This document shows, in pieces, positions 49,380 to 63,120 of a DNA stretch of 64,000 bases; position 1 is the first letter of the stretch, and the number at the start of each line of letters is the position of its first letter. The notes below the pieces were generated by a model, which was given only the letters and a program-made list of their open reading frames with translations, had not been told where the DNA came from and did no database searches. Origin of the DNA: Hydrolagus colliei (taxonomy: Eukaryota). The stretch is taken from NCBI GenBank assembly GCA_035084275.1, contig CM068770.1:558001-622000 (forward strand), in the 5' to 3' direction. Both the position numbers and the translations under genes were made by a program.

Positions 49380-50200
49380 TGAAAACAGCTGGCAAAGGAT
49401 AATGAAACCAAGAGTTTTATATAAATGATTTGGATGAAGGAATAGAAAGTTTTATATCCAAGTTTGCAGACAACACTAAGATAGGAGGCTCAGTAAGTGG
49501 TGTAGATGGGAGTAGGAAGTTACAAAGGGACTTATAGACAGATTAAGTGAGTGAGTAAACTTGAGTTCAATGTAGGGAAGCACGAGGTCATCCACTATGG
49601 ACCAAACAAAGATAAGGCAGATCATTTCTTAATGGGGAGAAGTTAAGAGATGTGGAGGAGCGAAGAGGTTTGGGGCCATATCCCCAAATCACTGAAAGCT
49701 ACTTCCCAGGTACAAAATATAATCAAAAGGGGGAAATGGAAGGTTCCTTATCTTAGTGCCAGGAAACACTGTGTAAACTTGGATTGTATTGCCTTGAGTT
49801 TACACGTTTGAGGGGTGATTTGATTGAGGTATTTAAGATGATAAAGGGATTTGATAGGGTAGATACAGAGAAGGTATTTCCTCTGGTGGGGAATCTGAAA
49901 CAAGGAGATATAGTCTTAAAATTAGAATCAGTTCATTTAAGTGTGAAATCAGGGGGTTTTCTTTTCACTCAAAAGGTGGTAGAAATCTGGAACTCTCTCC
50001 CCCAAAAGGTTGTGGATTCTGGATCCATTCACACCTTCAAGAGTGAGGTTGAGGGATGTTTGTAGGTCAGGGTATCAAGGGATACGGGGAGAAAGCGGGA
50101 AATAGGAATTGAAAGGATTAGTGGAGGTGCAGATCAGCCATGGTCTAATTAAATAGCGAAACAGGCTTGAAGGGCTGAATTGTCTACACCTGTTCCTATG
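49380..50200 (+). mobile_element. CR1 LINE 3' fragment
   Basis: INDLDEGIESFISKFADNTK-like RT remnant (tatataaatgatttggatgaagg...aagtttgcagacaacactaag), RLRGDLIEVFKMIKGFDRVD, and VVEIWNSLPQKVV. Confidence 0.9.
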
Positions 50201-50204
50201 TGTG

Positions 50205-50510
50205 ACAATGTTGAAACATCTCAAAGTGCTTCACAGAAAGTGGAGTGGCTGTTTGTGTGGGTGAAATGTGGCAGCAAATTGTGCACAGCAGCGTCTCACA
50301 TTGAATGACCAAATTATTCAAATTAATTCATGTGTTTTTTGGAAGGGATTTTTACTCCTGGGAAAGCGATCTGCCGATCGATTAACAACCGGGTTCCTAC
50401 TTACAGTGTCGTGCGGAGTAACAAAACTTGCCCAATGTTTCTCCCCACCCAGGAATCGAACCCGGGTCCTCTTGCTTGCCAAGTCGAGGGCTCTAACCAC
50501 TGACCTACTC
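50205..50510 (-). mobile_element. tRNA-derived SINE beginning ~15 nt after a JAML donor
   Basis: Reverse complement reads gtaggtcagtggttagagccctcg...ggttcgattcctggg, then core. Confidence 0.8.
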
Positions 50511-50525
50511 TAGGAAGTATCTCAC

Positions 50526-51536
50526 CATAGTCATGTAGGTTGCGTTGGTGACCACCACCTTCTCTTGATCCCTGGCTGGCTCCGCTCCTCCGCCAGGACT
50601 CCGCCTCACAGACACATAGACGTTTGTTTCCTGAGGAAACGTATTCAGTTTTAGAATAGAAACGGAAGTCGCCGATGAGATCCCTGAATATTTAACCCCT
50701 AAATGTTTCCTTTTCTCTGCTTTTCCTGCTCCTTTTCCAACATGGAAGGTCATCGACCCTGAAGCGCTGACTCACTGTCCTCTCTGCAGAGATGCTGCCT
50801 GACCTGCTGAGTGTTCCCAGCCACTTCTGTTTGGATTTCGGGTTGGCAGAAATCACCGTTAATTCCCTATTAAACTCTCTCCCAAAGCTCTCAGGGATGG
50901 CTTCTTCTACGCCAACAAAGGCACTTCTGGTGTGATCCAGTGTGAAAGGCTCTACGCATAAACCCAAGTTATTAGAATAATAATCCTTGCATTTGATATA
51001 GCGGCTTTTCACATCTTACCGACGTCTCAAAGCGCTTCATAGAATACACTGTAAAGTGAAGTGACTGTATATTTTGTGGGCGAAACGCGGCAGCCAATTG
51101 CGCACAGCAGCGTCTCCCCCACAAACAGTCGTGGATTACAATGACCAATTTTTTATTATTGTGGGTTTTTGGGGGGAGGGATTATTATTAGGCGCGTGTG
51201 TGTGTGTTTGGGTGAAGGAAAGTTGCCCAATGTTTCGCCCTGACCTGCCTGGATTCGAAACACAGGCCTCACGCTTGTAAGGCGAGTTCTCTTAAAGGAA
51301 CATGAGGAGGCCATTCAGCCCCTTGAGCCTGTTCTGCAATTCTGCGGCCGATCTGTACCTCAACTCCCAACGATCTGCCTTTACCATATCCCCTGACATC
51401 CTGACCTATCAAACATCTCTCCACCTCAGCCTTGTTCTTAAGAACTTCCCCCTCTTTATGTTATTTTATTTTTACCTCAGAGTTTGCGGTTTGGAGTTCA
51501 TTGTTACTCCTGTTACGCCTTATCCCCACATCAGAG

Positions 51537-51568
<32 letters not shown>

Positions 51569-54500
51569 TGGAGAAATGACAAGTTTACAATTAGTTGTGA
51601 AAAAAAACATGGATTTAAAACTTCTACATAAGATTTAGCTGGTGAAAGCTTCCCATCAATGCTCGGCTTCCACCAGCCTGACATCGCTTGGTATATCGTG
51701 AGCCAAACAACAACAACAACACATCAGGTGGACTTCCCCAGGTCTTGGACTATACTGTCTCAGATACACAATTAATAACGATAATCCTTGGTCTTATTAC
51801 AGCGCCCCATCAAGCCTTGGAGACGCCTCAAAGCTCTTCACAGGGTACACTGTTAAAGTGACTGTATTTTGTGGGAGAAACGCAGCAGCCAATTGTGCTC
51901 AGCAGAGTAACCACAAACAGTGACGGATTGAGTGATCAAATGATTATTTTATTGATTGATTAAAAATTTTCTTGAGGGAAATGGGGGTCCGCCAATCGTC
52001 CAGAACGGGACTCCTCACTACTGCGAGTGTGGAGTCAAGGAGACCTGGCCAACATTTCCCCCCCGTGGTCCGGGAATTGAACCCAGGTCCTCTCGCTTGT
52101 GAGGCGAGCGAACTAACCACTGAGCTACAGGATTGCACGTACATCCTCCAAATCTATTACCTACCTTTGTCTCCTCTGCACCCATACAGCCAGGAGGATC
52201 AGGAGAGTCACAGCCCCAAACAATCCCAGCGCTCCCACCACAGAGTACATCAGTGTGGGCTGCCCGACCGATACTGGCAGCCGAACAACAGGCCTCAGCA
52301 TCCTGGATCCTGAGGGAACCACAGACAATTCATTACATTGTTCCTGAGAGAAACTGTGTCTCTAACCCTGGTCTGGGAGTGTGGACGGACAGACGCACAG
52401 TGTAGAGGGAGCTTTACTGTGTCTCTAACCCTGACCTGGGAGGGTAGATGCACAGTGTAGAGGTTCTGTGGTTGGAAGAGGATTCTGGTATAATAATAAT
52501 AATATTCATTGCACTTGGTATAGCGCTTTTCATATCTTCTAGACATCTAAAAGTTCTTCACAGAATGTACTTTAAAGTGAATTGACTGAATATTTGTGGG
52601 TGGAGCAGCCAATTGTTCACAGTAGCGTCCCCGCAAACAGTCGTGGATTGAAACGACCAAATGATTATCGTTTCTTTTCGAAGGGATTATTTCATTGGAA
52701 AAGTGATGTGCCAGTCGATCCGATCAACCAGCTTCCCCCCTGAGTAAACACACAGGCCCGTGGAGTAAGGAAACTTGCCTGGGAATTGAACTTTCTTGCT
52801 AATTGGGTTGTCTAATCACAGAGCTACACGAAGGGAAACCATGTTGATTTCTTCATCACTCCAGACACCCCTTGTCTCTCTGGTGTGTTGCCTACTCTTC
52901 ACTATTAACACCTCTTCTCCCCAGTTCTGTTTAAACCCACCCCACCTTTTGTTTCACTCCGCCATCAATTCTTTAACCCATAGATTAACACATTTTTTCC
53001 TTTGTCTTCTTCTTCTATCTTCTTTGTCTCTTTTGTCTTCCTTGTCCTGCCTCTCCGCCCCCCCATCCCTCCCCCCCCACCCCCACCCACCCGGCTCTAA
53101 CTTGTCCATAAAAACCATCTCCCTCCCAACAAGCCCCGGTTCTGACGAAGGGTCGTGGACCCCCAAAAACGTTGACTCGATCTTCCCCTCTCCATAGATG
53201 CTGCCTGACCTGCTGAGTCGAACCAGTTTTTGGTTTCAGATTTCCACCATCTGCAGTACTGTATTTTGGTGGTTCGATCCCTTCGTTACCTGCACACAGG
53301 ACGCGGATTTCCATTTGCTCTCTGAGGATGGCGTGATGGGTCCTGGGCGTCCGCACCTCGCAGGTGTAGAAGCCGGTGTCTCGGCATTTCGCGGCTGTCA
53401 GGAGGATGGAGCAGTTGTTATGCCGGACGTTGCCGACCCAGCGCAGTCTGTCCGTGAAGGTCGTGTTCTGAACGACCACCGACATGTTACTGTAATAGTA
53501 CAGGATCTGACGGCAAAGGGACAGGATATCACCCCACAAGAAAGGTTAGAGTTCGAGCCGTTCCAACGACAAGCACAAGTATCCAGCTTCGAGACACAGT
53601 AACGCTCCGTGTGTCCGTCCACACTCCCAGGTCAGGGTTAGAGACACAATAAAGCTCCCTCTACACTGTGTGTCCACACTCCCCAGGTCAGGGTCAGAGA
53701 CACAGTAAAGCTCCCTCTACACTGTGTGTCTGTCCACTCTCCCAGGTCAGGGTTAGAGACACAATAAAGCTCCCTCTACACTGTGTGTCCACACTCCCCA
53801 GGTCAGGGTCAGAGACACAGTAAAGCTCCCTCTACACTGTGTGTCTGTCCACTCTCCCAGGTCAGGGTTAGAGACACAGTAAAGCTCCCTCTACACTGTG
53901 TGTCCACACTCCCAGGTCAGGGTTAGAGACACAGTAAAGCTCCCTCTACACTGTGTGTCTGTCCACACTCCCAGGTCAGGGTTAGAGACACAGTAAAGCT
54001 CCCTCTACATGGGATCACCTGGAGCTTGGACCCAATCGTAGACCCTGGTGGTCGACACACACAGTCACACGTCCTCACTCGGTGCCTGTGGTTACAGTGA
54101 GGACCACCCCACCCCCACCCCACCCCCCCCCTCCCCCCCCCAGGCCTCGTTACCTCCCGTTGGTTCTCTGTGTGGCCGGGATGCGGGGAGTGGTACCAGT
54201 CGACCTTCACATGCTCTCGGCTGGTGTTCAGATGCAGTTGGAGGTCACACAGCAGTAAAGCCGGATCCCCCTCCCTCACGCCCTCCGGGGGCCACAACCG
54301 GAGCGCCAGGAGCCAGCGCCCAGCTACAGCCAACACAGGGTTAACGTTAGAATAATAATAATAATAATAATCCTTGCATTCGATAGAGCGCCTTATCACG
54401 TCTTCTGGACGTCTCAAAGCGCTTCACAGGTTATGCTGTAAAGTGAATTGACTGTATATTTGTGGGCGAAACGCGGCAGCCGATTCCCCCCCCCCCCCGT

Positions 54501-55248
54501 TCCCCCCCGTGTTTTGAAATGACCAAATTAGTATATTTTTTGGAAGGATTATTATTATTAGTAGGCGTGTGGCGTCAGGAAGCTCAGCCGAGGTTCCACT
54601 CTGCCTTCAAAGCGCTCTGAGACGCCGTCCGGGGTGGAGGGCGCGATATGAATCGAAGTTGTCATCGTCGTTGGAATTGAACCCGGGTCTCTCGCGTGCA
54701 ATGTGAGCGCGGCTACTCGATCCACCGCTGTTTGCAAAAAAAACATTTAAAAAAAAAATGAAACAAATGACAATTTGGTCACCCAAACCACGATTGCCTG
54801 CGAGACGCCGCTGAGCTCAATCGGCTGCCGCGTTCTGCCCAAAATACATACACGGTCACCACACTTTACATTGTACATAGAACACTTTGAGACGTCGCAA
54901 ACACACTCGTTATCCAAATGCCGGGATTATCGCTGCTGTTGTTAAAAAGGGAAGCGTTTACGTGGCAGGGAAGGTGGGGAGCGCTGTGTGTGGGGTGGGG
55001 GACGGACGCGGGCTTTGGGTGAGTGTGTGGGGGTGTGTGTGTGTGTGTGAGGGGGGGGTGTGTGTGTGTGTGTGGAGGTGGGGTGGGAGGGAGAGGTGTT
55101 GGGGGGGAGCGCTGGCTGGCTCATTACACAATCCTGAGACCCACGAACATTTGACTAGTTACCATCACTTCACGTCTCCCAGGCTTGTACGTTACTTACC
55201 CCCGAGGAGGAGGAGGAGAGAGGAGAGGGGCAGAGTGCGGCGGGCCAT
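50526..55248 (-). CDS. JAML: Junctional adhesion molecule-like (JAML/AMICA1) orthologue with a single Ig-V domain; exons 55248-55200, 54323-54154, 53506-53290, 52309-52165, 51518-51476, 50630-50526 (terminal exon uncertain)
   Basis: Phases are consistent (1,0,1,2,0,0) over 729 nt. Features: signal peptide [16 protein letters not shown]; Ig-V with [18 protein letters not shown] (human JAML D1 has VLYYYSNLSV) and DTGFYTCEV; [25 protein letters not shown]; tail ending TNATYMTM (human ATYMTM). It lies between SCN2B and MPZL3 on the same strand, as in mammals. Confidence 0.85.
50975..51290 (-). mobile_element. tRNA-derived SINE
   Basis: Core, tail and most of the head in reverse complement. Confidence 0.88.
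51772..52135 (-). mobile_element. tRNA-derived SINE
   Basis: Reverse complement of cctgtagctcagtggttag...ggttcaattcccgg head plus core. Confidence 0.8.
52975..53270 (+). mobile_element. Penelope-like element terminal repeat with a degenerate hammerhead motif
   Basis: ctgacgaagggtcgtggacccccaaaaacgttgactc...gatgctgcctgacctgctgagt...tttcagatttccaccatctgcag. Confidence 0.65.
53591..54009 (+). repeat. Tandem array of a 50-59-bp unit (gagacacagtaaagctccctctacactgtgtgtc(tgtc)cacactcccaggtcagggtta), about 7.5 copies
   Basis: Unit starts at 53591, 53641, 53697, 53756, 53812, 53871, 53926 and 53985. Confidence 0.95.
54350..54720 (-). mobile_element. tRNA-derived SINE, followed by an oppositely oriented partial copy (about 54770-54930)
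   Basis: (att)n tail, core and ggttcaattcc head in reverse complement. Confidence 0.8.
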
Positions 55249-55539
55249 CCCGAGCACACACCGGGGGGTTACAGTACGCAAGGTTCCCCCCGTTAAAGCC
55301 CCCTCCCCACCGGCTCTCACTGAACACGCTGTGTAACTAACACCAAACCAACAGCTTCCCGGCAATAGACAAACAGGTCACCTCCCCCTCACAGTCACTA
55401 GAATAACTGCCAGCTTCCGTTTGGCTCAGACACATCTACTGTATAACCACACACACTCACCACCACTTCAGTACATCCACCACCACAACAACAACTTTAG
55501 TTTCCCTCCCCTCCCTCCTTCCCTCGCTCCCTCCCTCCC

Positions 55540-56330
55540 TCTCCCCCTCCACGACGGGCGGCGTCTCGGAGCGCTTCACAATGGCAGAGCCCAAGGCCGA
55601 GCCAGGAGGAGAGGGGGGGGAAGTTGACCGTAAGCGTAATTGGTCGAAGAGAAAGAAAGGCATGACCTGAAGATGGGGAGGGAGGGAGGGAGGGAGATGA
55701 AGAGGTTGAGGGAGGGAGTTCCAGAGTTGCGGGGTGTAATGGCTGAAGGCGTGGCAGCTGATGGTGGAGAGGAGGAGGCCAGACCCAGTAGAGCAGAGGC
55801 AGCGAGTGGTGGTGTGAGGAAAGAGGAGGTTAGAGAGATGAGGAGGGGGTGGGGTTGCAGAGGAGCGGAGGGATTGAAACGCAACAGTGAGGATCTTGAA
55901 GTTGATCCTCTCTGTGAAGTTTGGTGCGGGTGAGAATGCGGGTGAGCTGGGCTTTCTGAATGGTAGCGGAGGGGAGACAGGCGAGGAGGGAGTTGGAGTA
56001 GTCCAGCCGAGAGGTGACGAAGGCAATGGACCAGGGTTTCGCCAGCTGTTGGGGGGTGAGGTATTGACGGAGACGGGCCACGTGGCAGTGATGGAAGACA
56101 GCGATGCTGGTGGACGTGGGGGAGGGAGGATAACTGGGGAATCAAACCTGATGCCTAAGGCGAGGAGGTCGGGTAGGTTGAGGAGGTTTGGAACCATTGT
56201 ACAGAACATGTTGACAGGAGCCAAAGAGTGTGGGTTCCATCTTGTTGGGTTTAACTGCAGGAAGTTTGCTCATCCAGCTCTTGAGGTCTGACAGACAGGT
56301 GTCTGCCAGCGATGGGCAGAGGAAGTGGGA
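55540..56330 (-). mobile_element. L2 LINE 3' region
   Basis: ARLRQYLTPQQLAKPWSIAFVTSRLDYSNSLL, ERINFKILTVAFQSL, AFSHYTPQLWNSLPQ. Confidence 0.88.
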
Positions 56331-58461: not shown

Positions 58462-61400
58462 CTCGGAGTGGGGGTGGGGGGTTCACAGTTCAATGAGCAC
58501 AGAGAGAGAGGGGTGAGGGGTGGGAGATGACAGGGAGGGACTGGAGTCCTTTGGGGTGGGGGGGGGGGGAGAGGCTTCAGACTGAGACTGCAGCTGGGGG
58601 AGGGAGACTAGACAGTAACCCTCGCTCACTCCCCGCCTGCACCTGCTTCGAGGGGAGGTGACGGGTCGCACGGCTGGTGAGAGAGAACGGAGCGTCTGTC
58701 CGTCTGTCTACATGTCTGTCTGTCTGTCTGTGGTCGGTCGGTCTGTGTGTCTTTATGTGTGTGTGTGTGTGTGTGTGTGTGACCCCCCCCCCCCTGATCC
58801 TCGCTCCTACCTCCAGACAGGCTGCACATCGCACACGCATCCTCTGGCATCGTCCTCCACGCTCCCCGACACCCCCTCCGTCTCCGTCTCCGTCTCCAAC
58901 ATCGATCACCACCCTGAACACAACGGCAAAGACTGGTAACCAGCAAAACACCAACCCCTACACGCACACACTCCCCGCACAGACACACACGATGTCCCCC
59001 CACAGACACACACACACACTCCCCCACTCACACATACCCCCCCCCCCACACAGAGTCTACCCCCTCCAACCATCCAACTCACCCAGCTGACACTCTCCCC
59101 CACACTCTCCAAGTCACACACTATCCCCCCCCACACACTCTCCCCCCCCACTACTCACACACATCCCCAAGACACACACACTCTTCCCCCACTACACACA
59201 CCCCACATCCCCTTCACACACACAGCCACACATCCCCCCACCACCGCCACTCCCCACACACACACACAGACAGATGACACAAAGCTGGAAGAAATATTAA
59301 ATGAGGTATAGTAGCCGACTGCAAGAGGACATAACCAGAATAGTAAAATGGGCAGACACATGGCAGATGAAGTTTAATGTGGAGAAATTGGAGGTGATGC
59401 ATTTTTGGAAGGAAGAATGAGCAGAAGCAATATAAACTGATGGTAGAATCTTAAAGTGGGAAGGAACAGAGAGACCTGGGTGTTCATATATATATGTATA
59501 AATATTTGAAGGTGGCAGGACAGGTAGCTAAAACTGTTAAAAAAAAAGCCTACGAGATACTCGGCTTTATATTGGGTAGAGACCAAAAATCAGGAAGTAT
59601 GATGAACCTTTATATAAAACCCTGGTTAGATCTCAGTTGGAGATGTTCAGTTCTGGGCACCACACTTTAGGAAGGATCTCAAAGTACCAGGAATGAGGGA
59701 CCAAGGTGCAGAGATTTCCCAGGAATGGTACCAGGAATGAGGGACTTCAGTCATCATCATCAGGAGAGGCCAGAGAGAAGCTAGGATTATTCTCCCGGGA
59801 GCAGAGAAGGTTCAGAAGAGATTTCAATGGAAGTTTTCAAAGCGATCAGGCGATTCGATCGGGTGAACAAGGAGGAACTGTTTCCACTGGGTTGGTCACC
59901 CGAGCGATTTAAAATAGTCGATAAAAGAAACTGAGGGGAGGCGAGGAGACATTTTTTTTCCACACAGCGAGTTGTTGGGATCTGAAACGCGTTGCCTGAG
60001 AGGAGGGTGAAAGCCGATTCGATGACAACTTTTAAGAGAGAAGCAGAGAGTTATTGGGGAGGTCGGTCGGGTTTGCAGGGCTATGGGGAGAGAGAGCGAG
60101 GGAGTGGGGTTGATTTGGACAGCTCTTTTCAAAGAGCCGACACAGAGATGATGGACAGAGAATGGCCTCCGTCTGTGCTGTATAATTCTATGAACCCACC
60201 ACCACACACACACACACACACACACACAGACCCACGCACCCCCCTTCCCGTACTGACCCCTCGGGGACACCGATGCCCGGGCCCTTGTCGGGGGGCCGGG
60301 AGCCAAGGACCCCGGAGACCTTCCCCGTCCACAGCAACAGCGTCATCACGGTAACCAGAGACGGCAACAACACCAGCAGCGACAGGAACACTCTTGCCTT
60401 CATCCTGTACAGTTTAGCTGCGGTGGGTGGGGGGGGGGCGGGGGGGGAGAGAGAGTGTGAGAGACAGAGTGAGGGTGGGGGGAGAGGGACAATAACAAAA
60501 TTACTTGTGTGAAGCGGTTTTCACGTCAGGCGAACGTCCCGAGCCACTGGCTGTGTGTTGGACCCGAGCTGGGGTCAGGATCAGGGGGTGGGGGGCAGGG
60601 GGTGGGGGTGTAAAGTAGGGTAAGACCAATGGTACAGCCAATTGCGCACAGCACAGCGCTCCCCACAAACACTCGCGGAGGTTGGTCAGAACTGGACCGA
60701 TGGACGATTGGGTTTGATGGGAAGAGGGATGGAAGGGAGAGGGAGGTGGGTTGATGGAGTGGGTGGGGAGAGTTTGGGTGAGGGGTGGGGGGGGGGGGGC
60801 TGGGACTCTTACCTCTCTTGGTGACGGAGAGCACGGTGCGGCGGGAAGGGGCCAGGGTGTCGGGGGGGTTACGGACGGAGCAGGAGAATGTCCCGTTATC
60901 TGCGAGGGTCAGGTTCCTCACAACTATGGAGGCGTTTCCCCGACTCACGTCACCGATCCACACAACCCTGTCCTTCAGTGGGCTCTGAGAGGCCGGGTAC
61001 ACGCCAGCCTGGTAATACAGTATCTGTGAGAGGAGAGTAGGGGGGGGCAGGGGGGGGGCAGGGGGTGGGGAGAGAGAGAGGAGGGAGGGAGGGAGGGGAG
61101 GGAGGAGGGAGGGAGGGGGAGAGATAGATGGAGGGAAAGAAAGAATAAATCTTGGGTCATTTGAGGGCATAAAAGTTGACTGTCTGCCCCACACACACTC
61201 AGCCAGCCTCATGCACACTCAGCCAATTCACACTCAGCCCCCCCCTCCCCCCCCCCCCCCCGCTCACACTCAGCTCCCCTCACAATCAGTCCCTCACACC
61301 ACCACAACACAATGACACGTGTGTAACACCTGTCACATCAGCACATCCGCTCAGCGCCTCTTCGCACACACACGCCCCCCACCCCCCCCTCAAACACACC

Positions 61401-61621
61401 CGCCCACGACTCTCCCTCGCGGTGGTGGGGGGGGAGGGGGGGGGCGATCTCTCTCACCGAGTGCTGGGGTCCGGTGTGGAGTGGTTGGAAGGCCCATTCC
61501 ACGGTTAGTTTCCTGGTGATGGGGGCGGATGACCTGAAGTTGCATTTCAGCTCCAGATCCTCGCCCACGTGACCCGTGACCTCGGGCGCCATCGATACGT
61601 CAACCGCGCTCGCCCCGGTGA
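58180..61621 (-). CDS. MPZL3: Myelin protein zero-like 3; exons 61621-61458, 61023-60813, 60417-60258, 58913-58811, 58257-58180 (signal-peptide exon not located)
   Basis: Ig-V: GHVGEDLELKCNFRSSAPITRKLTVEW...ILYYQAGVYP...DRVVWIGDVSRGNASI...DNGTFSCSVRNPPD...SVTKR. TM: VFLSLLVLLPSLVTVMTLLLW. The tail contains RCQRMRVRCAACLE (human MPZL3 has LCVRCAECLD). Phases are consistent (1,0,1,2,0). Confidence 0.88.
59275..60195 (+). mobile_element. CR1 LINE 3' fragment in an MPZL3 intron
   Basis: gcagacacatggcagatgaagtttaatgtggagaaat..gaggtgatgcattttgg (WADTWQMKFNVEK..EVMHFG), and a 3' end gatggacagagaatggcctccgtctgtgctgtataattctatga. Confidence 0.88.
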
Positions 61622-63120
61622 CTGCCGAGAAAACACCGGAGGGTTACCGTCAGCGAACCGGGCAATCAGCCACACACACACACACAGTCACAGAGAGGGA
61701 GCTGGGTCTCTATTCCTCTGAGTTTAATAACCATAATAATAATCTTTACATTTCATAATAATAAGAATCCTCGCATTTGACATGGCGCTTTTCATATCTT
61801 ATCGACGTCTCAAAGCGCTTCACAGAATGCGCTGTAAAGTGAAGTGACTGTATATTTGTGGGAGAAGCGCGGCAGCGCAATTGCGCACGGCCATGTATCA
61901 AATACCAGGATTATTATTATTATCATCATCATTTTATAATTGGAGCCAGACATATTTAGCAGTGAAATCAGGAGCAATGTTTTCACTCAAAACCTGTAAC
62001 TCTCCCCCCATCTCTCTCTGCCCCAAAAGGCAGTAGATCCAGTCACGTTGTCTGGACTGAGGTGGACAGAGGTTTGTCGGGTCAGGGGATCAGGGAATAC
62101 GGGGGCAAAGGCCCCTCACTGGGGCTGAGGGTCATGAGGATCTAATAGAATGACGGAACAGGGGCTTGAGGGCTGAATATCCTCCCCCTGTTCCCATTTG
62201 CTCTATCACTAAACTGGGAACTGGCAAAAATGTTGTCTCTGCCTGACCTCCCCCTCCTCCCTCTCCCCCCCACCACCCTGTATAGTCTCACCCCTGCACA
62301 CTCCCCCTCTCCGCCCCACCCCCCCCCACCTCTCCCCCACCCCCACTCACTTGCAATCAGTGTATCTGATTCATTATTTAACCATTTGTAAACTTCCTCA
62401 AAAAAATTTTTCCTTCCTGTTTGTGCAGGAAGTGGGGTGGGGGAGGCAAGGGGAGGTTGGCACCGTGATTATTATACTGTTAATCCCCCCCCCACCCCCT
62501 CACCCACCCCCTCACCCACCCCCCTGCCTCCCATCCATCGAGTCTGGCGCCTCTGAGAGGCTGATCAGAGGGAGCTCAGTCGGGGGGGGGGGTAGTGGGA
62601 GGGAGGCTTCTCATGTCTGTGCTGATCGCTCACTCATTGCAGCTCTCTGCTCTAAACCATTCCCCATTCCTCTCTCTCACTCTCTTGCTATCGCTTGCAC
62701 ACTCTCTCCCCCCCCCCCAGCCAAATAGCGGTGGGGTTGGGGCGGTGGGACAGGATGGGTGGGGGAGGGAAAACCGAGCGGGAGGGACTGAGGCAACTTC
62801 GTCTTTTTAGTGACTGTGTGTGTCTTATGTGTGTGTCTGTGTGTATGGGGGAAGAACAACAAGAATATAAATCGCTGGGGAACTTAACACTCAGCAGGTC
62901 AGGCAGCATCTATAGAGAGAGGAAAGTGAGCCAACGTTTCAGACCGTGGATGCTGCTGACCTGCTGAGTGTTCGCAGCCATTTCTGTTGTGTGTTTTTTT
63001 CCACATTTGTGTTTATTCCAACACATCCGAGTTACAAACAGCCCAGCTGCACAGTGATCCCAATCTCAACTTGGGTGGGGTTCAGTGACAAATCACTCCA
63101 TTTACAGGAAGAGCGATAGC

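What the first reader, a model, noticed from the sequence alone, without database searches (positions are those of the whole stretch)
50526..55248. JAML orthologue with one Ig domain but an intact YMTM signalling motif
Seen: signal peptide, one Ig-V (two exons), TM and tail. The Ig exon splices in frame to the TM exon, and the 980-nt intron between them is filled by SINE, Penelope and tandem-unit sequence, leaving no room for a second domain. The domain resembles human D1 (LYYYSN.SV). Established: mammalian JAML has two Ig-V domains, binds CXADR through D1, and co-stimulates epithelial gamma-delta T cells via PI3K recruited to a YMxM motif. Inference: this may be the pre-duplication form, implying that JAML-PI3K co-stimulation dates to early jawed vertebrates and that D2 arose later by internal duplication. 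Loss of D2 in this lineage is the alternative.
Basis: partly seen in the sequence, partly recalled or inferred. Interest (0 to 1): 0.7.

Follow-up and report, generated by a model that had tools for sequence, protein, structure and literature searches.

The report
Single-Ig JAML orthologue of a cartilaginous fish
This is an ordinary, intact-looking cartilaginous-fish copy of the immune co-stimulatory receptor gene JAML with one immunoglobulin domain, and comparison shows one domain is the normal state in every vertebrate group sampled except placental mammals, which gained the second domain by duplicating the first.

Summary
On the minus strand at 50526-55248 there is a gene with canonical splice sites. 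It has a signal exon, one V-set Ig domain split over two exons, a stalk/TM exon and a tail ending in YMTM. A profile scan finds no second Ig domain or relic anywhere in the gene.

It is a JAML orthologue on four counts:
- Its best solved-structure match is mouse JAML, with D1 scoring above D2.
- It falls inside a 100/99-supported JAML clade, apart from MPZL1/2/3 and SCN2B.
- It lies between SCN2B and MPZL3 on the same strand.
- Its two-tyrosine exon ends exactly at Y[MV]TM|gt, as in sharks, platypus, a marsupial and an armadillo.

The "pre-duplication" reading is supported and generalised. Sharks, a ray, paddlefish, turtle, birds, crocodilians, platypus and marsupials all have one domain. Only eutherians have two. 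Eutherian D1 and D2 are sister clades (100/96), encoded by a tandemly duplicated exon pair.

There is a 31-nt exon at 51476-51506, and the last mapped exon starts at 50630, adding a conserved NVYVSV tyrosine motif. The final exon was not found.

PI3K and CXADR function is inferred only. Single-Ig JAML-like genes are already annotated in several sharks, so this is a new member of a known kind.

The parts
55200..55248 (-). Exon 1: start codon and signal peptide ([16 protein letters not shown], ends in phase 1, donor G|gtaagt)
   Evidence: Same length (16 aa) and phase as exon 1 of the Mustelus orthologue. The AF2 model has a helix at residues 8-20.
54154..54323 (-). Exon 2: end of signal peptide and first half of the V-set Ig domain (A-C' strands; C42, W59)
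   Evidence: Ig-profile hit with domain i-E 8e-9. Acceptor ctgtag|, donor GAG|gtaacg. C42 and W59 are invariant in the alignment of 18 orthologues.
53290..53506 (-). Exon 3: second half of the V-set domain ([11 protein letters not shown]...DTGFYTC...RVLCA; R93, D116, G118, C122, plus chondrichthyan-specific C114 and C144)
   Evidence: Ig-profile hit E 8e-30. 45-47% identical to shark orthologues by tblastn. 35-39% identical to eutherian D1.
52310..53289 (-). 980-nt intron between the Ig-b exon and the stalk/TM exon; holds a SINE, tandem-unit copies and pyrimidine-rich sequence, and no Ig-like coding
   Evidence: tblastn with eutherian JAML finds nothing better than E 1.3 here.
52165..52309 (-). 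Exon 4: stalk ([16 protein letters not shown]) and transmembrane helix ([26 protein letters not shown]) with the stop-transfer RRQ; ends in phase 2
   Evidence: Aligns with the stalk/TM exon of the shark orthologues (R..RLP.S motif). AF2 helix at 163-200.
51476..51506 (-). Alternative acceptors lie at 51509 and 51518.
   Evidence: Found by enumerating AG...GT exons of the right phase. Same length, phase and ...TCTGAG|gtaa end as the 31-nt Mustelus exon (R)NYPDRLEDSE. NSE-ET aligns with SED/SEE-T in sharks. Predicted only; no transcript data.
50526..50630 (-). Exon 6: two-tyrosine exon [35 protein letters not shown], phase 0 to 0, acceptor cctcag|, donor ATG|gtgaga. Carries Y209 (YxxV) and Y236 (YMTM = YxxM).
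Evidence: The homologous exons begin just before the first tyrosine in sharks (cag|DTNRYVTV..) and, shown with their acceptors, in armadillo, Dromiciops and platypus (ctag|KH[VI]YS..). They end at Y[MV]TM|gt in sharks, armadillo and platypus. Y209, Y236 and M239 are invariant in 18 sequences.
50420..50515 (-). Head of a tRNA-derived SINE that begins about 12 nt after the exon-6 donor. It supplies the TAG that ends the read-through peptide VRYFLE*. This is most likely intronic and not the true C-terminus.
   Evidence: Sequence read. Other copies in the window. Orthologues splice after Y[MV]TM to a further exon.
35797..37700 (-). Downstream neighbour SCN2B (two Ig exons and a TM exon); synteny anchor
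   Evidence: Joined exon peptides match human sodium channel beta-2 at E 7e-65 over 165 aa. Ig-profile hits.
60823..61634 (-). Upstream neighbour, MPZL3-like (the two Ig exons); synteny anchor
   Evidence: 51% identical to Heterodontus MPZL3. Sister to it in the tree at 99-100/95-96.

Best explanation
The locus is the JAML orthologue of a cartilaginous fish. In the Ig tree it branches outside the sampled sharks and ray. It encodes a type I membrane protein with a signal peptide, one V-set Ig domain of the MPZ/SCN-beta/JAML kind, a short stalk, one TM helix and a disordered tail. The tail carries two tyrosine motifs that are invariant across jawed vertebrates: Yxx[VI], then [TI]Y[MVI]TM.

The single domain corresponds to the D1 lineage and is the ancestral architecture. 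D2 of placental mammals arose on the eutherian stem by tandem duplication of the two Ig exons.

Inferred mechanism: the single distal V domain engages a ligand on neighbouring cells, by analogy CXADR. Phosphorylation of the YxxM tyrosine then docks the p85 SH2 domains of PI3K, giving a CD28-like co-stimulatory signal. The first tyrosine motif probably recruits another SH2 or adaptor protein.

Shown here: gene structure, orthology, domain number, and the timing and direction of the duplication. Inferred only: ligand, phosphorylation, PI3K recruitment and expression in lymphocytes.
For: 1. Sequence affinity. The best PDB match is mouse JAML at E 6e-20 (75 bits). MPZ follows at 29 bits and SCN-betas at 24-27 bits. 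D1 scores 45.4 against 28.7 bits for D2.

2. Full-library HMMER search. The closest proteins are single-Ig proteins of Heptranchias, Mustelus and Mobula, followed by JAMLs.

3. Trees of 53-71 Ig domains (IQ-TREE, LG+C20). The JAML clade is supported 100/99 against MPZL1/2/3, MPZ and SCN2B. The window groups with the chondrichthyan JAML-likes at 97-99/89-91. The gene tree mirrors the species tree.

4. Synteny. SCN2B, this gene and MPZL3-like all lie on the minus strand. From established knowledge, not tested here, this is the order at human 11q23.3. Fused MPZL-JAML gene models in crocodile and birds show the same adjacency indirectly.

5. Exon-level homology. The Ig domain is split at the same place in all orthologues. 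The 31-nt phase 2-to-0 exon and the phase 0-to-0 two-tyrosine exon match their shark counterparts, and the two-tyrosine exon ends exactly at Y[MV]TM|gt in sharks, platypus and armadillo too.

6. Tail motif. It is present in every JAML examined and in none of the other roughly 90 V-set hits. Y209, Y236 and M239 are invariant.

7. Domain number. One V-set domain is found in 10 shark or ray species, paddlefish, turtle, chicken and other birds, crocodilians, platypus and 8 marsupials. Two domains are found in all eutherians listed, including Xenarthra and Afrotheria.

8. Duplication. Eutherian D1 and D2 are sister clades (99-100/90-96), nested above marsupials and platypus.

9. Gap-free genomic loci. 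One Ig exon pair and no relic in Mustelus, S. torazame, Dromiciops and platypus. Two consecutive pairs split at the same codon position in armadillo.

10. Published mammalian function (CXADR ligand; PI3K via a YMxM motif shared with CD28): PMC8404475 and PMC12237671, both citing Verdino et al. 2010.
Against: - There are no transcript data for this species, so exon 5 and the 3' end are predictions.
- The last exon was not found: hmmsearch with shark last exons gave nothing better than E 0.23 and a pattern search found nothing. Completeness of the gene is therefore unproven.
- The AU test does not reject a tree in which D2 lies outside all other JAML domains (delta lnL 14.5, p 0.11, 121 columns).
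- Amphibians, lungfish, gar and teleosts were not sampled. The coelacanth model (201 aa) is truncated.
- The window's Ig domain is only 42% identical to the nearest shark orthologue. It also has a window-specific Cys105 in place of a Gly that is invariant in the other 17 sequences, so some functional drift is possible.
- Structure comparison cannot separate JAML from MPZ or SCN-beta.
- Conservation of the CXADR-contact residues could not be assessed.
Confidence: 0.85

Rival explanations
1. Secondary loss. The ancestral JAML had two Ig domains, and this lineage lost D2.
For: The AU test does not formally reject D2 branching outside all other JAML domains (p 0.11). The 980-nt intron is heavily remodelled by repeats, which could have erased a relic.
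Against: Given the sampled distribution, this would need independent losses in chondrichthyans, paddlefish, coelacanth, sauropsids, monotremes and marsupials. No D2 relic appears in gap-free loci of two sharks, a marsupial and platypus, or in the window. D2 is sister to eutherian D1 with 100/96 support, inside mammals.
Confidence: 0.04
2. Not JAML. The gene is an MPZL2/MPZL3/MPZ-type or SCN-beta-type paralogue, as several shark copies are labelled ('myelin protein P0-like'), and its YMTM is convergent.
For: NCBI names most shark orthologues 'myelin protein P0-like' or 'MPZL3'. Foldseek ranks MPZ, MPZL1 and SCN2B structures above JAML. The gene sits next to MPZL3 and SCN2B, which have the same split-V exon plan.
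Against: Sequence scores favour JAML by more than 45 bits. The JAML clade is separated from all MPZ, MPZL and SCN2B domains at 100/99, and the window's own MPZL3 and SCN2B fall in the outgroup. The two-tyrosine exon is homologous at exon-boundary level to that of mammalian JAML. The motif is absent from all non-JAML hits. Scyliorhinus canicula's copy is already named JAML-like.
Confidence: 0.03
3. Decaying or truncated copy. The gene is a pseudogene or has lost its normal C-terminus, for example through the SINE 12 nt after the YMTM donor. The protein would then end [10 protein letters not shown] or not be made at all.
For: No last exon could be found. All introns are full of SINEs. The Gly that is invariant in the other 17 sequences is replaced by Cys105, giving an odd number of ectodomain cysteines. 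The branch is long (0.57). No matching protein is on record in the collections searched.
Against: Six exons are open, in phase and flanked by canonical splice sites. All hallmark V-set residues and both tail tyrosines are intact. Last exons are short (8-43 aa) and poorly conserved even among sharks, so failure to detect one is expected. Two assembly gaps (43607-43753, 46325-46581) lie downstream and could hide it.
Confidence: 0.08

Closest known systems
Mammalian (eutherian) JAML / AMICA1 (mouse structure 3MJ6; complex with CAR 3MJ7)
   Same: Orthologous locus between SCN2B and MPZL3. V-set domain most similar to D1 (YYYSN.SV, D.G.YTCE). Ig domain split over two exons at the same position. Single TM helix. 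Tail exon with Yxx[VI] and ATYMTM ending at the same splice donor. No PDZ motif seen.
   Different: One Ig domain instead of two. About 30-35% identity. Shorter tail. Chondrichthyan-specific cysteines C114 and C144. Ligand and signalling untested.
Single-Ig JAML-like genes annotated in elasmobranchs (e.g. Scyliorhinus canicula 'JAML-like isoform X2' P0133; Heptranchias, Mustelus, Heterodontus, Rhincodon, Cetorhinus and Mobula 'myelin protein P0-like' or uncharacterised)
   Same: Same architecture, same exon plan (signal / Ig-a / Ig-b / stalk-TM / 31-nt exon / two-tyrosine exon), the same extra Cys pair and the same two tyrosine motifs.
   Different: Only 37-42% identical. The window's gene branches outside all of them (99/97). 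Its motif is YMTM, where they have YVTM. Its two-tyrosine exon is 35 aa against 42 aa and is not duplicated. Its last exon is unidentified.
Single-Ig JAML of birds, turtles, crocodilians, platypus and marsupials (e.g. chicken XP_417915, 289-294 aa)
   Same: One V-set domain, a TM helix and a tail with both tyrosine motifs. This shows that the one-domain form is general outside eutherians.
   Different: These lack the chondrichthyan Cys pair. Sauropsid and monotreme tails carry a further P.EW motif that the chondrichthyan proteins lack.
CD28 family co-stimulators (CD28 YMNM, ICOS YMFM)
   Same: Works alike on paper: one V-type Ig domain, a TM helix, a short tail with a YMxM p85-binding motif, and possibly a membrane-proximal Cys.
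   Different: Not homologous beyond the Ig fold. The CD28-family V domain is encoded by a single exon and has the MYPPPY ligand loop (from established knowledge). CTLA-4 scored only E 0.08 against the query.
MPZL2 / MPZL3 / MPZ and SCN2B/4B (neighbouring paralogues of the 11q23.3 cluster)
   Same: Same split V-set exon plan and the same fold (Foldseek TM 0.8-0.89 to MPZ, MPZL1 and SCN2B). Genomic neighbours.
   Different: Separate clades (100/99). These have the NPPD motif after the F strand, which JAML lacks, and no Y..V / YxxM tail exon.

Membership tests
JAML (junctional adhesion molecule-like) orthology group | Ig domain groups with JAML domains rather than MPZ, MPZL or SCN-beta | tested here: met
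   JAML clade 100/99 with the window inside it. PDB phmmer gives JAML 75 bits against MPZ 29 bits.
JAML (junctional adhesion molecule-like) orthology group | Position between SCN2B and MPZL3 on the same strand | tested here: met
   SCN2B at 35.8-37.7 kb (E 7e-65) and MPZL3-like at 60.8-61.6 kb, all on the minus strand. The human gene order is taken from established knowledge and was not tested here.
JAML (junctional adhesion molecule-like) orthology group | Cytoplasmic YMxM/YxxM motif in the homologous tail exon | tested here: met
   ATYMTM|gtgaga at 50526. The same exon end occurs in sharks, platypus and armadillo. The motif's Tyr and final Met (Y236, M239) are invariant in the 18-sequence alignment, which includes marsupials.
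JAML (junctional adhesion molecule-like) orthology group | Two extracellular Ig domains (the textbook description, based on human and mouse) | tested here: not met
   One domain only. The feature also fails for all non-eutherian JAMLs. It therefore defines eutherian JAML and not the orthology group.
JAML (junctional adhesion molecule-like) orthology group | Binds CXADR through the membrane-distal domain | not testable with these tools
   Needs binding assays or a modelled complex. The paper with the interface residues (Verdino 2010) was not held.
JAML (junctional adhesion molecule-like) orthology group | Recruits PI3K p85 on tyrosine phosphorylation; expressed on gamma-delta or CD8 T cells and myeloid cells | not testable with these tools
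   Only the motif is seen here. The mammalian function comes from PMC8404475 and PMC12237671.
Classical JAM family (JAM-A/B/C) | V-type plus C2-type Ig domains and a C-terminal PDZ-binding motif | tested here: not met
   There is a single V domain. No JAM-A/B/C chain appears among the PDB matches at E<=10. The C-terminus is unresolved. Mammalian JAML also lacks the PDZ motif (PMC12237671).
MPZ / MPZL family | Groups with MPZ or MPZL V domains; NPPD motif after the F strand | tested here: not met
   It falls outside the MPZ/MPZL clades (100/99). The sequence after the F strand is EVRTPRTH, whereas the window's own MPZL3-like and SCN2B genes have NPPD and NPPT.
CD28 family | V domain encoded in one exon; sequence homology to CD28, CTLA-4 or ICOS | tested here: not met
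   The V domain is split over two exons. CTLA-4 matches only at E 0.08.

The most novel reading that the evidence does not exclude
JAML began as a CD28-like, single-V-domain co-stimulatory receptor with a two-tyrosine (Yxx[VI] + YxxM) tail, already in place in the last common ancestor of jawed vertebrates. It kept that form for over 400 million years in every lineage except placental mammals, where the ligand-binding domain was duplicated on the eutherian stem. The CXADR-JAML-PI3K axis would then be an ancient epithelial-lymphocyte signalling module, and the two-domain mouse and human protein a derived special case. In cartilaginous fishes the conserved C114/C144 pair, and the odd Cys105 here, might additionally make it a disulfide-linked dimer like CD28.
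Probability: 0.4. Interest if true: 0.55.

Novelty: new member of a known kind. Interest (0 to 1): 0.35.

Why it matters
For this window the result is mostly tidy annotation: it names a gene that several shark annotations call "myelin protein P0-like" and fixes its exon structure.

The wider by-product is modestly useful. All structural and functional work on JAML uses the two-domain mouse and human protein. The data here indicate that D2 is a eutherian novelty, and that the conserved core is one V domain plus a two-tyrosine tail exon.

This gives a clear minimal unit for testing whether CXADR binding and PI3K recruitment are ancient. It points to the first tyrosine motif, which is as conserved as YMxM. 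It also shows that non-eutherian models such as chicken, marsupials and sharks have a structurally simpler receptor. I found no paper stating this in the searchable library, but the annotations that show it are public.

Tried and rejected
1. It is in frame, but I rejected it. Orthologues in sharks, armadillo, a marsupial and platypus start this exon just before the first tyrosine motif, and in sharks a 31-nt exon precedes it. The window has matching sequences at 50630 and 51476-51506.

2. Read-through C-terminus [10 protein letters not shown], which looks like shark ...YVTMRSFLG. Rejected as coincidence. In Mustelus, platypus and armadillo an intron follows Y[MV]TM, and here the stop lies in a SINE head.

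3. Search for the last exon, by a profile of eight shark and ray last exons against minus-strand ORFs at 37400-50525 (best E 0.23) and by a pattern search after AG acceptors (no hit). Unresolved. I did not try to read through the N gaps.

4. Search for the 'RYVTV' exon by tblastn with shark proteins. Nothing was found, because the exon is short.

5. Fold comparison to discriminate families. The AF2 model is good for the Ig domain (pLDDT about 80-93), but Foldseek ranks MPZ, MPZL1 and SCN2B above JAML, so it is uninformative for orthology.

6. AU test of an ancient D2: not significant (p 0.11).

7. The look-up of encoding contigs for Heptranchias isoform X4: not on record. I used Mustelus and S. 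torazame instead.

8. Pfam scan of eight long ORFs elsewhere in the window: no families.

9. Verdino et al. 2010, for the interface residues: not held.

10. The first word-index protein search found only two eutherian JAMLs. The exhaustive representative search was needed to reach the shark orthologues.

Full report
**What is there.**
The finding lies on the minus strand. Reading the reverse complement of 50000-56000 and assembling the exons gives open exons with canonical GT-AG borders.
- Exon 1, 55200-55248: [16 protein letters not shown], donor G|gtaagt, phase 1.
- Exon 2, 54154-54323: end of the signal peptide and the first half of an Ig V domain.
- Exon 3, 53290-53506: [72 protein letters not shown].
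- Exon 4, 52165-52309: stalk, TM helix and RRQ.
- A tail exon ending ...TNATYMTM at 50526.

Pfam sees one V-set domain (E 3.9e-13) and nothing else. An AlphaFold2 model built on 18 orthologues shows one beta-sandwich (residues 24-140, pLDDT about 80-93), a TM helix (163-200) and a disordered tail. There are no N gaps inside the gene; the gaps are at 35590-35789, 43607-43753 and 46325-46581.

**Is a second Ig domain hidden?**
I built an HMM from the Ig region of JAML-like proteins and ran it, with filters off, over every ORF piece of at least 15 aa in all six frames of the window. It finds exactly three V domains, each as two half-exons:
- this gene (E 8e-30 and 8e-10);
- an MPZL3-like gene at 60.5-61.6 kb;
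- SCN2B at 37.0-37.7 kb.

Nothing else within or near the gene reaches E<1. tblastn with two-domain eutherian JAMLs gives the same picture. The 980-nt intron between the Ig-b and TM exons contains 457 nt that recur elsewhere in the window: a SINE with up to 21 copies, copies of the 59/115-nt tandem unit that also fills the Ig-a/Ig-b intron, and a 3-copy element. The rest is pyrimidine-rich. 'No room' is thus a little strong, but there is no Ig-like coding. I did not verify the 'Penelope' label.

**What it is.**
Against all PDB sequences the best match is mouse JAML (3mj6, E 6e-20, 75 bits). The domain aligns to D1 at 45.4 bits and to D2 at 28.7 bits. MPZ (29 bits), SCN3B, SCN2B and MPZL1 follow.

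An exhaustive HMMER search of 1.84 billion representatives gave single-Ig proteins as the best hits: Heptranchias (39% identity, E 2e-30), Mustelus and Mobula, followed by JAMLs. A profile search added Heterodontus, Scyliorhinus canicula (already named 'junctional adhesion molecule-like isoform X2'), S. torazame, Cetorhinus, Rhincodon, Chiloscyllium and Hemiscyllium. All have V-set only and are 239-326 aa long. Most are labelled 'myelin protein P0-like'.

In maximum-likelihood trees of 53-71 Ig domains, all JAML domains form a clade supported 100/99. The outgroups were MPZL3 (bird, Heterodontus and the window's own), MPZL2, MPZL1, SCN2B (including the window's own) and unnamed relatives. The window's domain groups with the chondrichthyan JAML-likes (97-99/89-91) and is sister to all sampled sharks plus the ray (99-100/97). 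The rest of the gene tree follows the species tree. The source is therefore a cartilaginous fish outside the sampled elasmobranchs, perhaps a holocephalan. That is an inference from branching order only.

**Synteny.**
The exon peptides at 37.0-37.7 kb and 35.8-35.9 kb match human sodium-channel beta-2 over 165 residues at E 7e-65. The Ig exons at 60.8-61.6 kb are 51% identical to Heterodontus MPZL3 and sister to it in the tree. All three genes are on the minus strand in the order SCN2B, JAML-like, MPZL3. To my knowledge (not tested here) this is the order at human 11q23.3. Erroneous fused MPZL-JAML gene models in crocodile and birds (P0011, P0013, P0028) show the adjacency in sauropsids indirectly.

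**Tail and corrected gene model.**
Every JAML examined carries [TI]Y[MVI]TM near the end of the tail, and none of the other roughly 90 V-set hits does. The motifs seen are ATYMTM (eutherians, marsupials), VTYMTM (platypus), ATYVTM (crocodilians, turtle), ETYITM (chicken), [EI/ET]YVTM (sharks, ray) and GIYVTM (paddlefish).

Mapping the Mustelus protein on its 50-kb locus gives this exon order:
- signal, Ig-a, Ig-b, stalk/TM;
- a 31-nt exon, (R)NYPDRLEDSE, phase 2 to 0;
- a 126-nt phase 0-0 exon, DTNRYVTV...EEIYVTM|gtaaga, present twice in Mustelus;
- a short last exon.

S. torazame has the same two-tyrosine exon. In armadillo and platypus the homologous exon reads ctag|KH[VI]YS.I...ATYMTM|gtgag.

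The exon is therefore 50526-50630, 35 aa, phase 0-0. A 31-nt exon of the required phase, (S)[10 protein letters not shown]|gtaaaa, lies at 51476-51506, with alternative acceptors at 51509 and 51518. The revised 239-aa product aligns cleanly with 17 orthologues, and Y209, Y236 and M239 fall in invariant columns.

Because orthologues splice immediately after Y[MV]TM, the window's ATG|gtgaga is most likely a donor. The read-through VRYFLE* is not the C-terminus; its TAG lies in the head of a tRNA-derived SINE that starts about 12 nt into the intron. I could not find the terminal exon. It is short and variable even among sharks, and two assembly gaps lie downstream.

**Pre-duplication or loss?**
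Single-Ig JAMLs are not peculiar to this lineage.
- One domain: chicken and seven other galliforms (289-294 aa), a finch, a turtle, crocodile, gharial and alligator, platypus (four isoforms), paddlefish and coelacanth (a truncated model).
- One domain: eight marsupials (Sarcophilus, Monodelphis, Dromiciops, Petaurus, Phascolarctos, Trichosurus, Notamacropus, Sminthopsis), at 243-289 aa with V-set only.
- Two domains: every eutherian listed, including Xenarthra (Choloepus, Tamandua, Dasypus) and Afrotheria (Loxodonta, Trichechus, Dugong, Orycteropus, Tenrec), at about 370-400 aa.

In the trees the eutherian D1 and D2 clades are sisters (99/90, 100/95, 100/96). They are nested inside mammals above marsupials (therian node 98-99/88-89) and platypus.

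At the DNA level, the gap-free loci of Mustelus, S. torazame, Dromiciops and platypus contain one Ig exon pair and no relic at E<=1. The armadillo locus contains two consecutive pairs split at the same codon position...HAT|EDYVLYYY and ...HGK|EEIVLHYD. D2 is thus a tandem duplication of the two D1 exons on the eutherian stem.

One caution is needed. With only 121 columns, an AU test does not reject a tree in which D2 lies outside all other JAML domains (delta lnL 14.5, p 0.11). That alternative would require at least six independent, traceless losses.

**How it probably works.**
Shown here: a type I membrane protein with one distal V domain and a tail carrying two tyrosines that are invariant across the cartilaginous fishes, crocodilians and marsupials aligned.

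Established for mouse and human: JAML binds CXADR and signals through PI3K via a YMxM motif shared with CD28 (PMC8404475 and PMC12237671, citing Verdino et al. 2010).

Inferred: the single domain is the D1-lineage, ligand-binding domain, and phosphorylated Y236 (YMTM) docks p85. The YVTM of the other chondrichthyans also fits the pY-[MVI]-x-M preference of p85 SH2 domains (established knowledge). The equally conserved first motif, Yxx[VI], engages another SH2 or adaptor protein.

Ligand-contact residues could not be checked, because the structural paper is not held. Fold comparison does not discriminate within the MPZ/SCN-beta/JAML group.

**Novelty and verdict.**
The gene is a new member of a known family. 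Orthologues with the same architecture are already in public annotation for about a dozen cartilaginous fishes, though often misnamed. I found no paper making that point. It is a modest, readily checkable observation, not a surprise about mechanism. Functional antiquity of JAML-PI3K co-stimulation remains an inference from motif conservation.

Noticed in passing
window 53290-53506 (residues C105, C114, C144 of the model): All ten chondrichthyan JAML-likes, including the window, share two extra cysteines: one in the E-F turn (KC.D.G) and one at the end of the G strand (VLC). Amniotes have E and P at those positions. The window alone also has Cys105 where the other 17 sequences have Gly, giving five ectodomain cysteines. 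Possible extra intradomain disulfide and/or covalent dimer.
   Followed up: partly
L001 32427-32552 and 36526-36651 (Mustelus asterias): The 126-nt two-tyrosine exon is tandemly duplicated in Mustelus, giving two Y..V + YxxM units. Heptranchias isoforms X2 (326 aa) and X4 (284 aa) differ by 42 aa, the size of one such unit, which may be the same exon; I did not align them. Copy number of the signalling exon may vary among sharks.
   Followed up: partly
window 35797-37700, minus strand: SCN2B orthologue (E 7e-65 to human beta-2). Its coding sequence runs into the N gap at 35590-35789 just after ...DDQKTEEEG, so the C-terminus is not readable.
   Followed up: partly
window 60529-61643, minus strand: MPZL3-like gene (two Ig exons, 51% identical to Heterodontus MPZL3). 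Only its Ig exons were mapped; the rest of the gene probably runs off or near the window end.
   Followed up: partly
window 53609-54009 and 52353-52463: A 59/115-nt tandem array (3.5-7 copies, 89-97% matches) fills much of the Ig-a/Ig-b intron. Related units recur in the next intron and elsewhere in the window (up to 9 copies).
   Followed up: partly
window 50213-50510, 50967-51292, 51768-52139, 52487-52780, 54351-54603: A tRNA-derived SINE family occupies every intron of the gene, in both orientations, with the repeated segments recurring up to 9-30 times in the window. One copy starts about 12 nt after the YMTM splice donor.
   Followed up: partly
window 37488-38135, minus strand: Upstream of SCN2B Ig exon 1, the same open frame reads as a long run of [11 protein letters not shown]-like units. 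This is a proline/serine-rich minisatellite, presumably intronic and not coding.
   Followed up: no
database proteins P0011, P0013, P0028, P0100, P0156: Several Ensembl, UniProt and NCBI models fuse an MPZL2/MPZL3 Ig domain to the JAML Ig domain (crocodile, fairy-wren, budgerigar, cheetah 'MPZL3 isoform X4'). These are read-through annotation artefacts. Incidentally they document MPZL-JAML adjacency on one strand in amniotes.
   Followed up: partly
alignment A1 columns 320-335 (tetrapod and paddlefish JAML tails): Sauropsid, platypus and paddlefish JAML tails share a further C-terminal motif, (Y..L.R...)P.EW. It is absent from the chondrichthyan proteins. It was not looked for in eutherian tails.
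   Followed up: no
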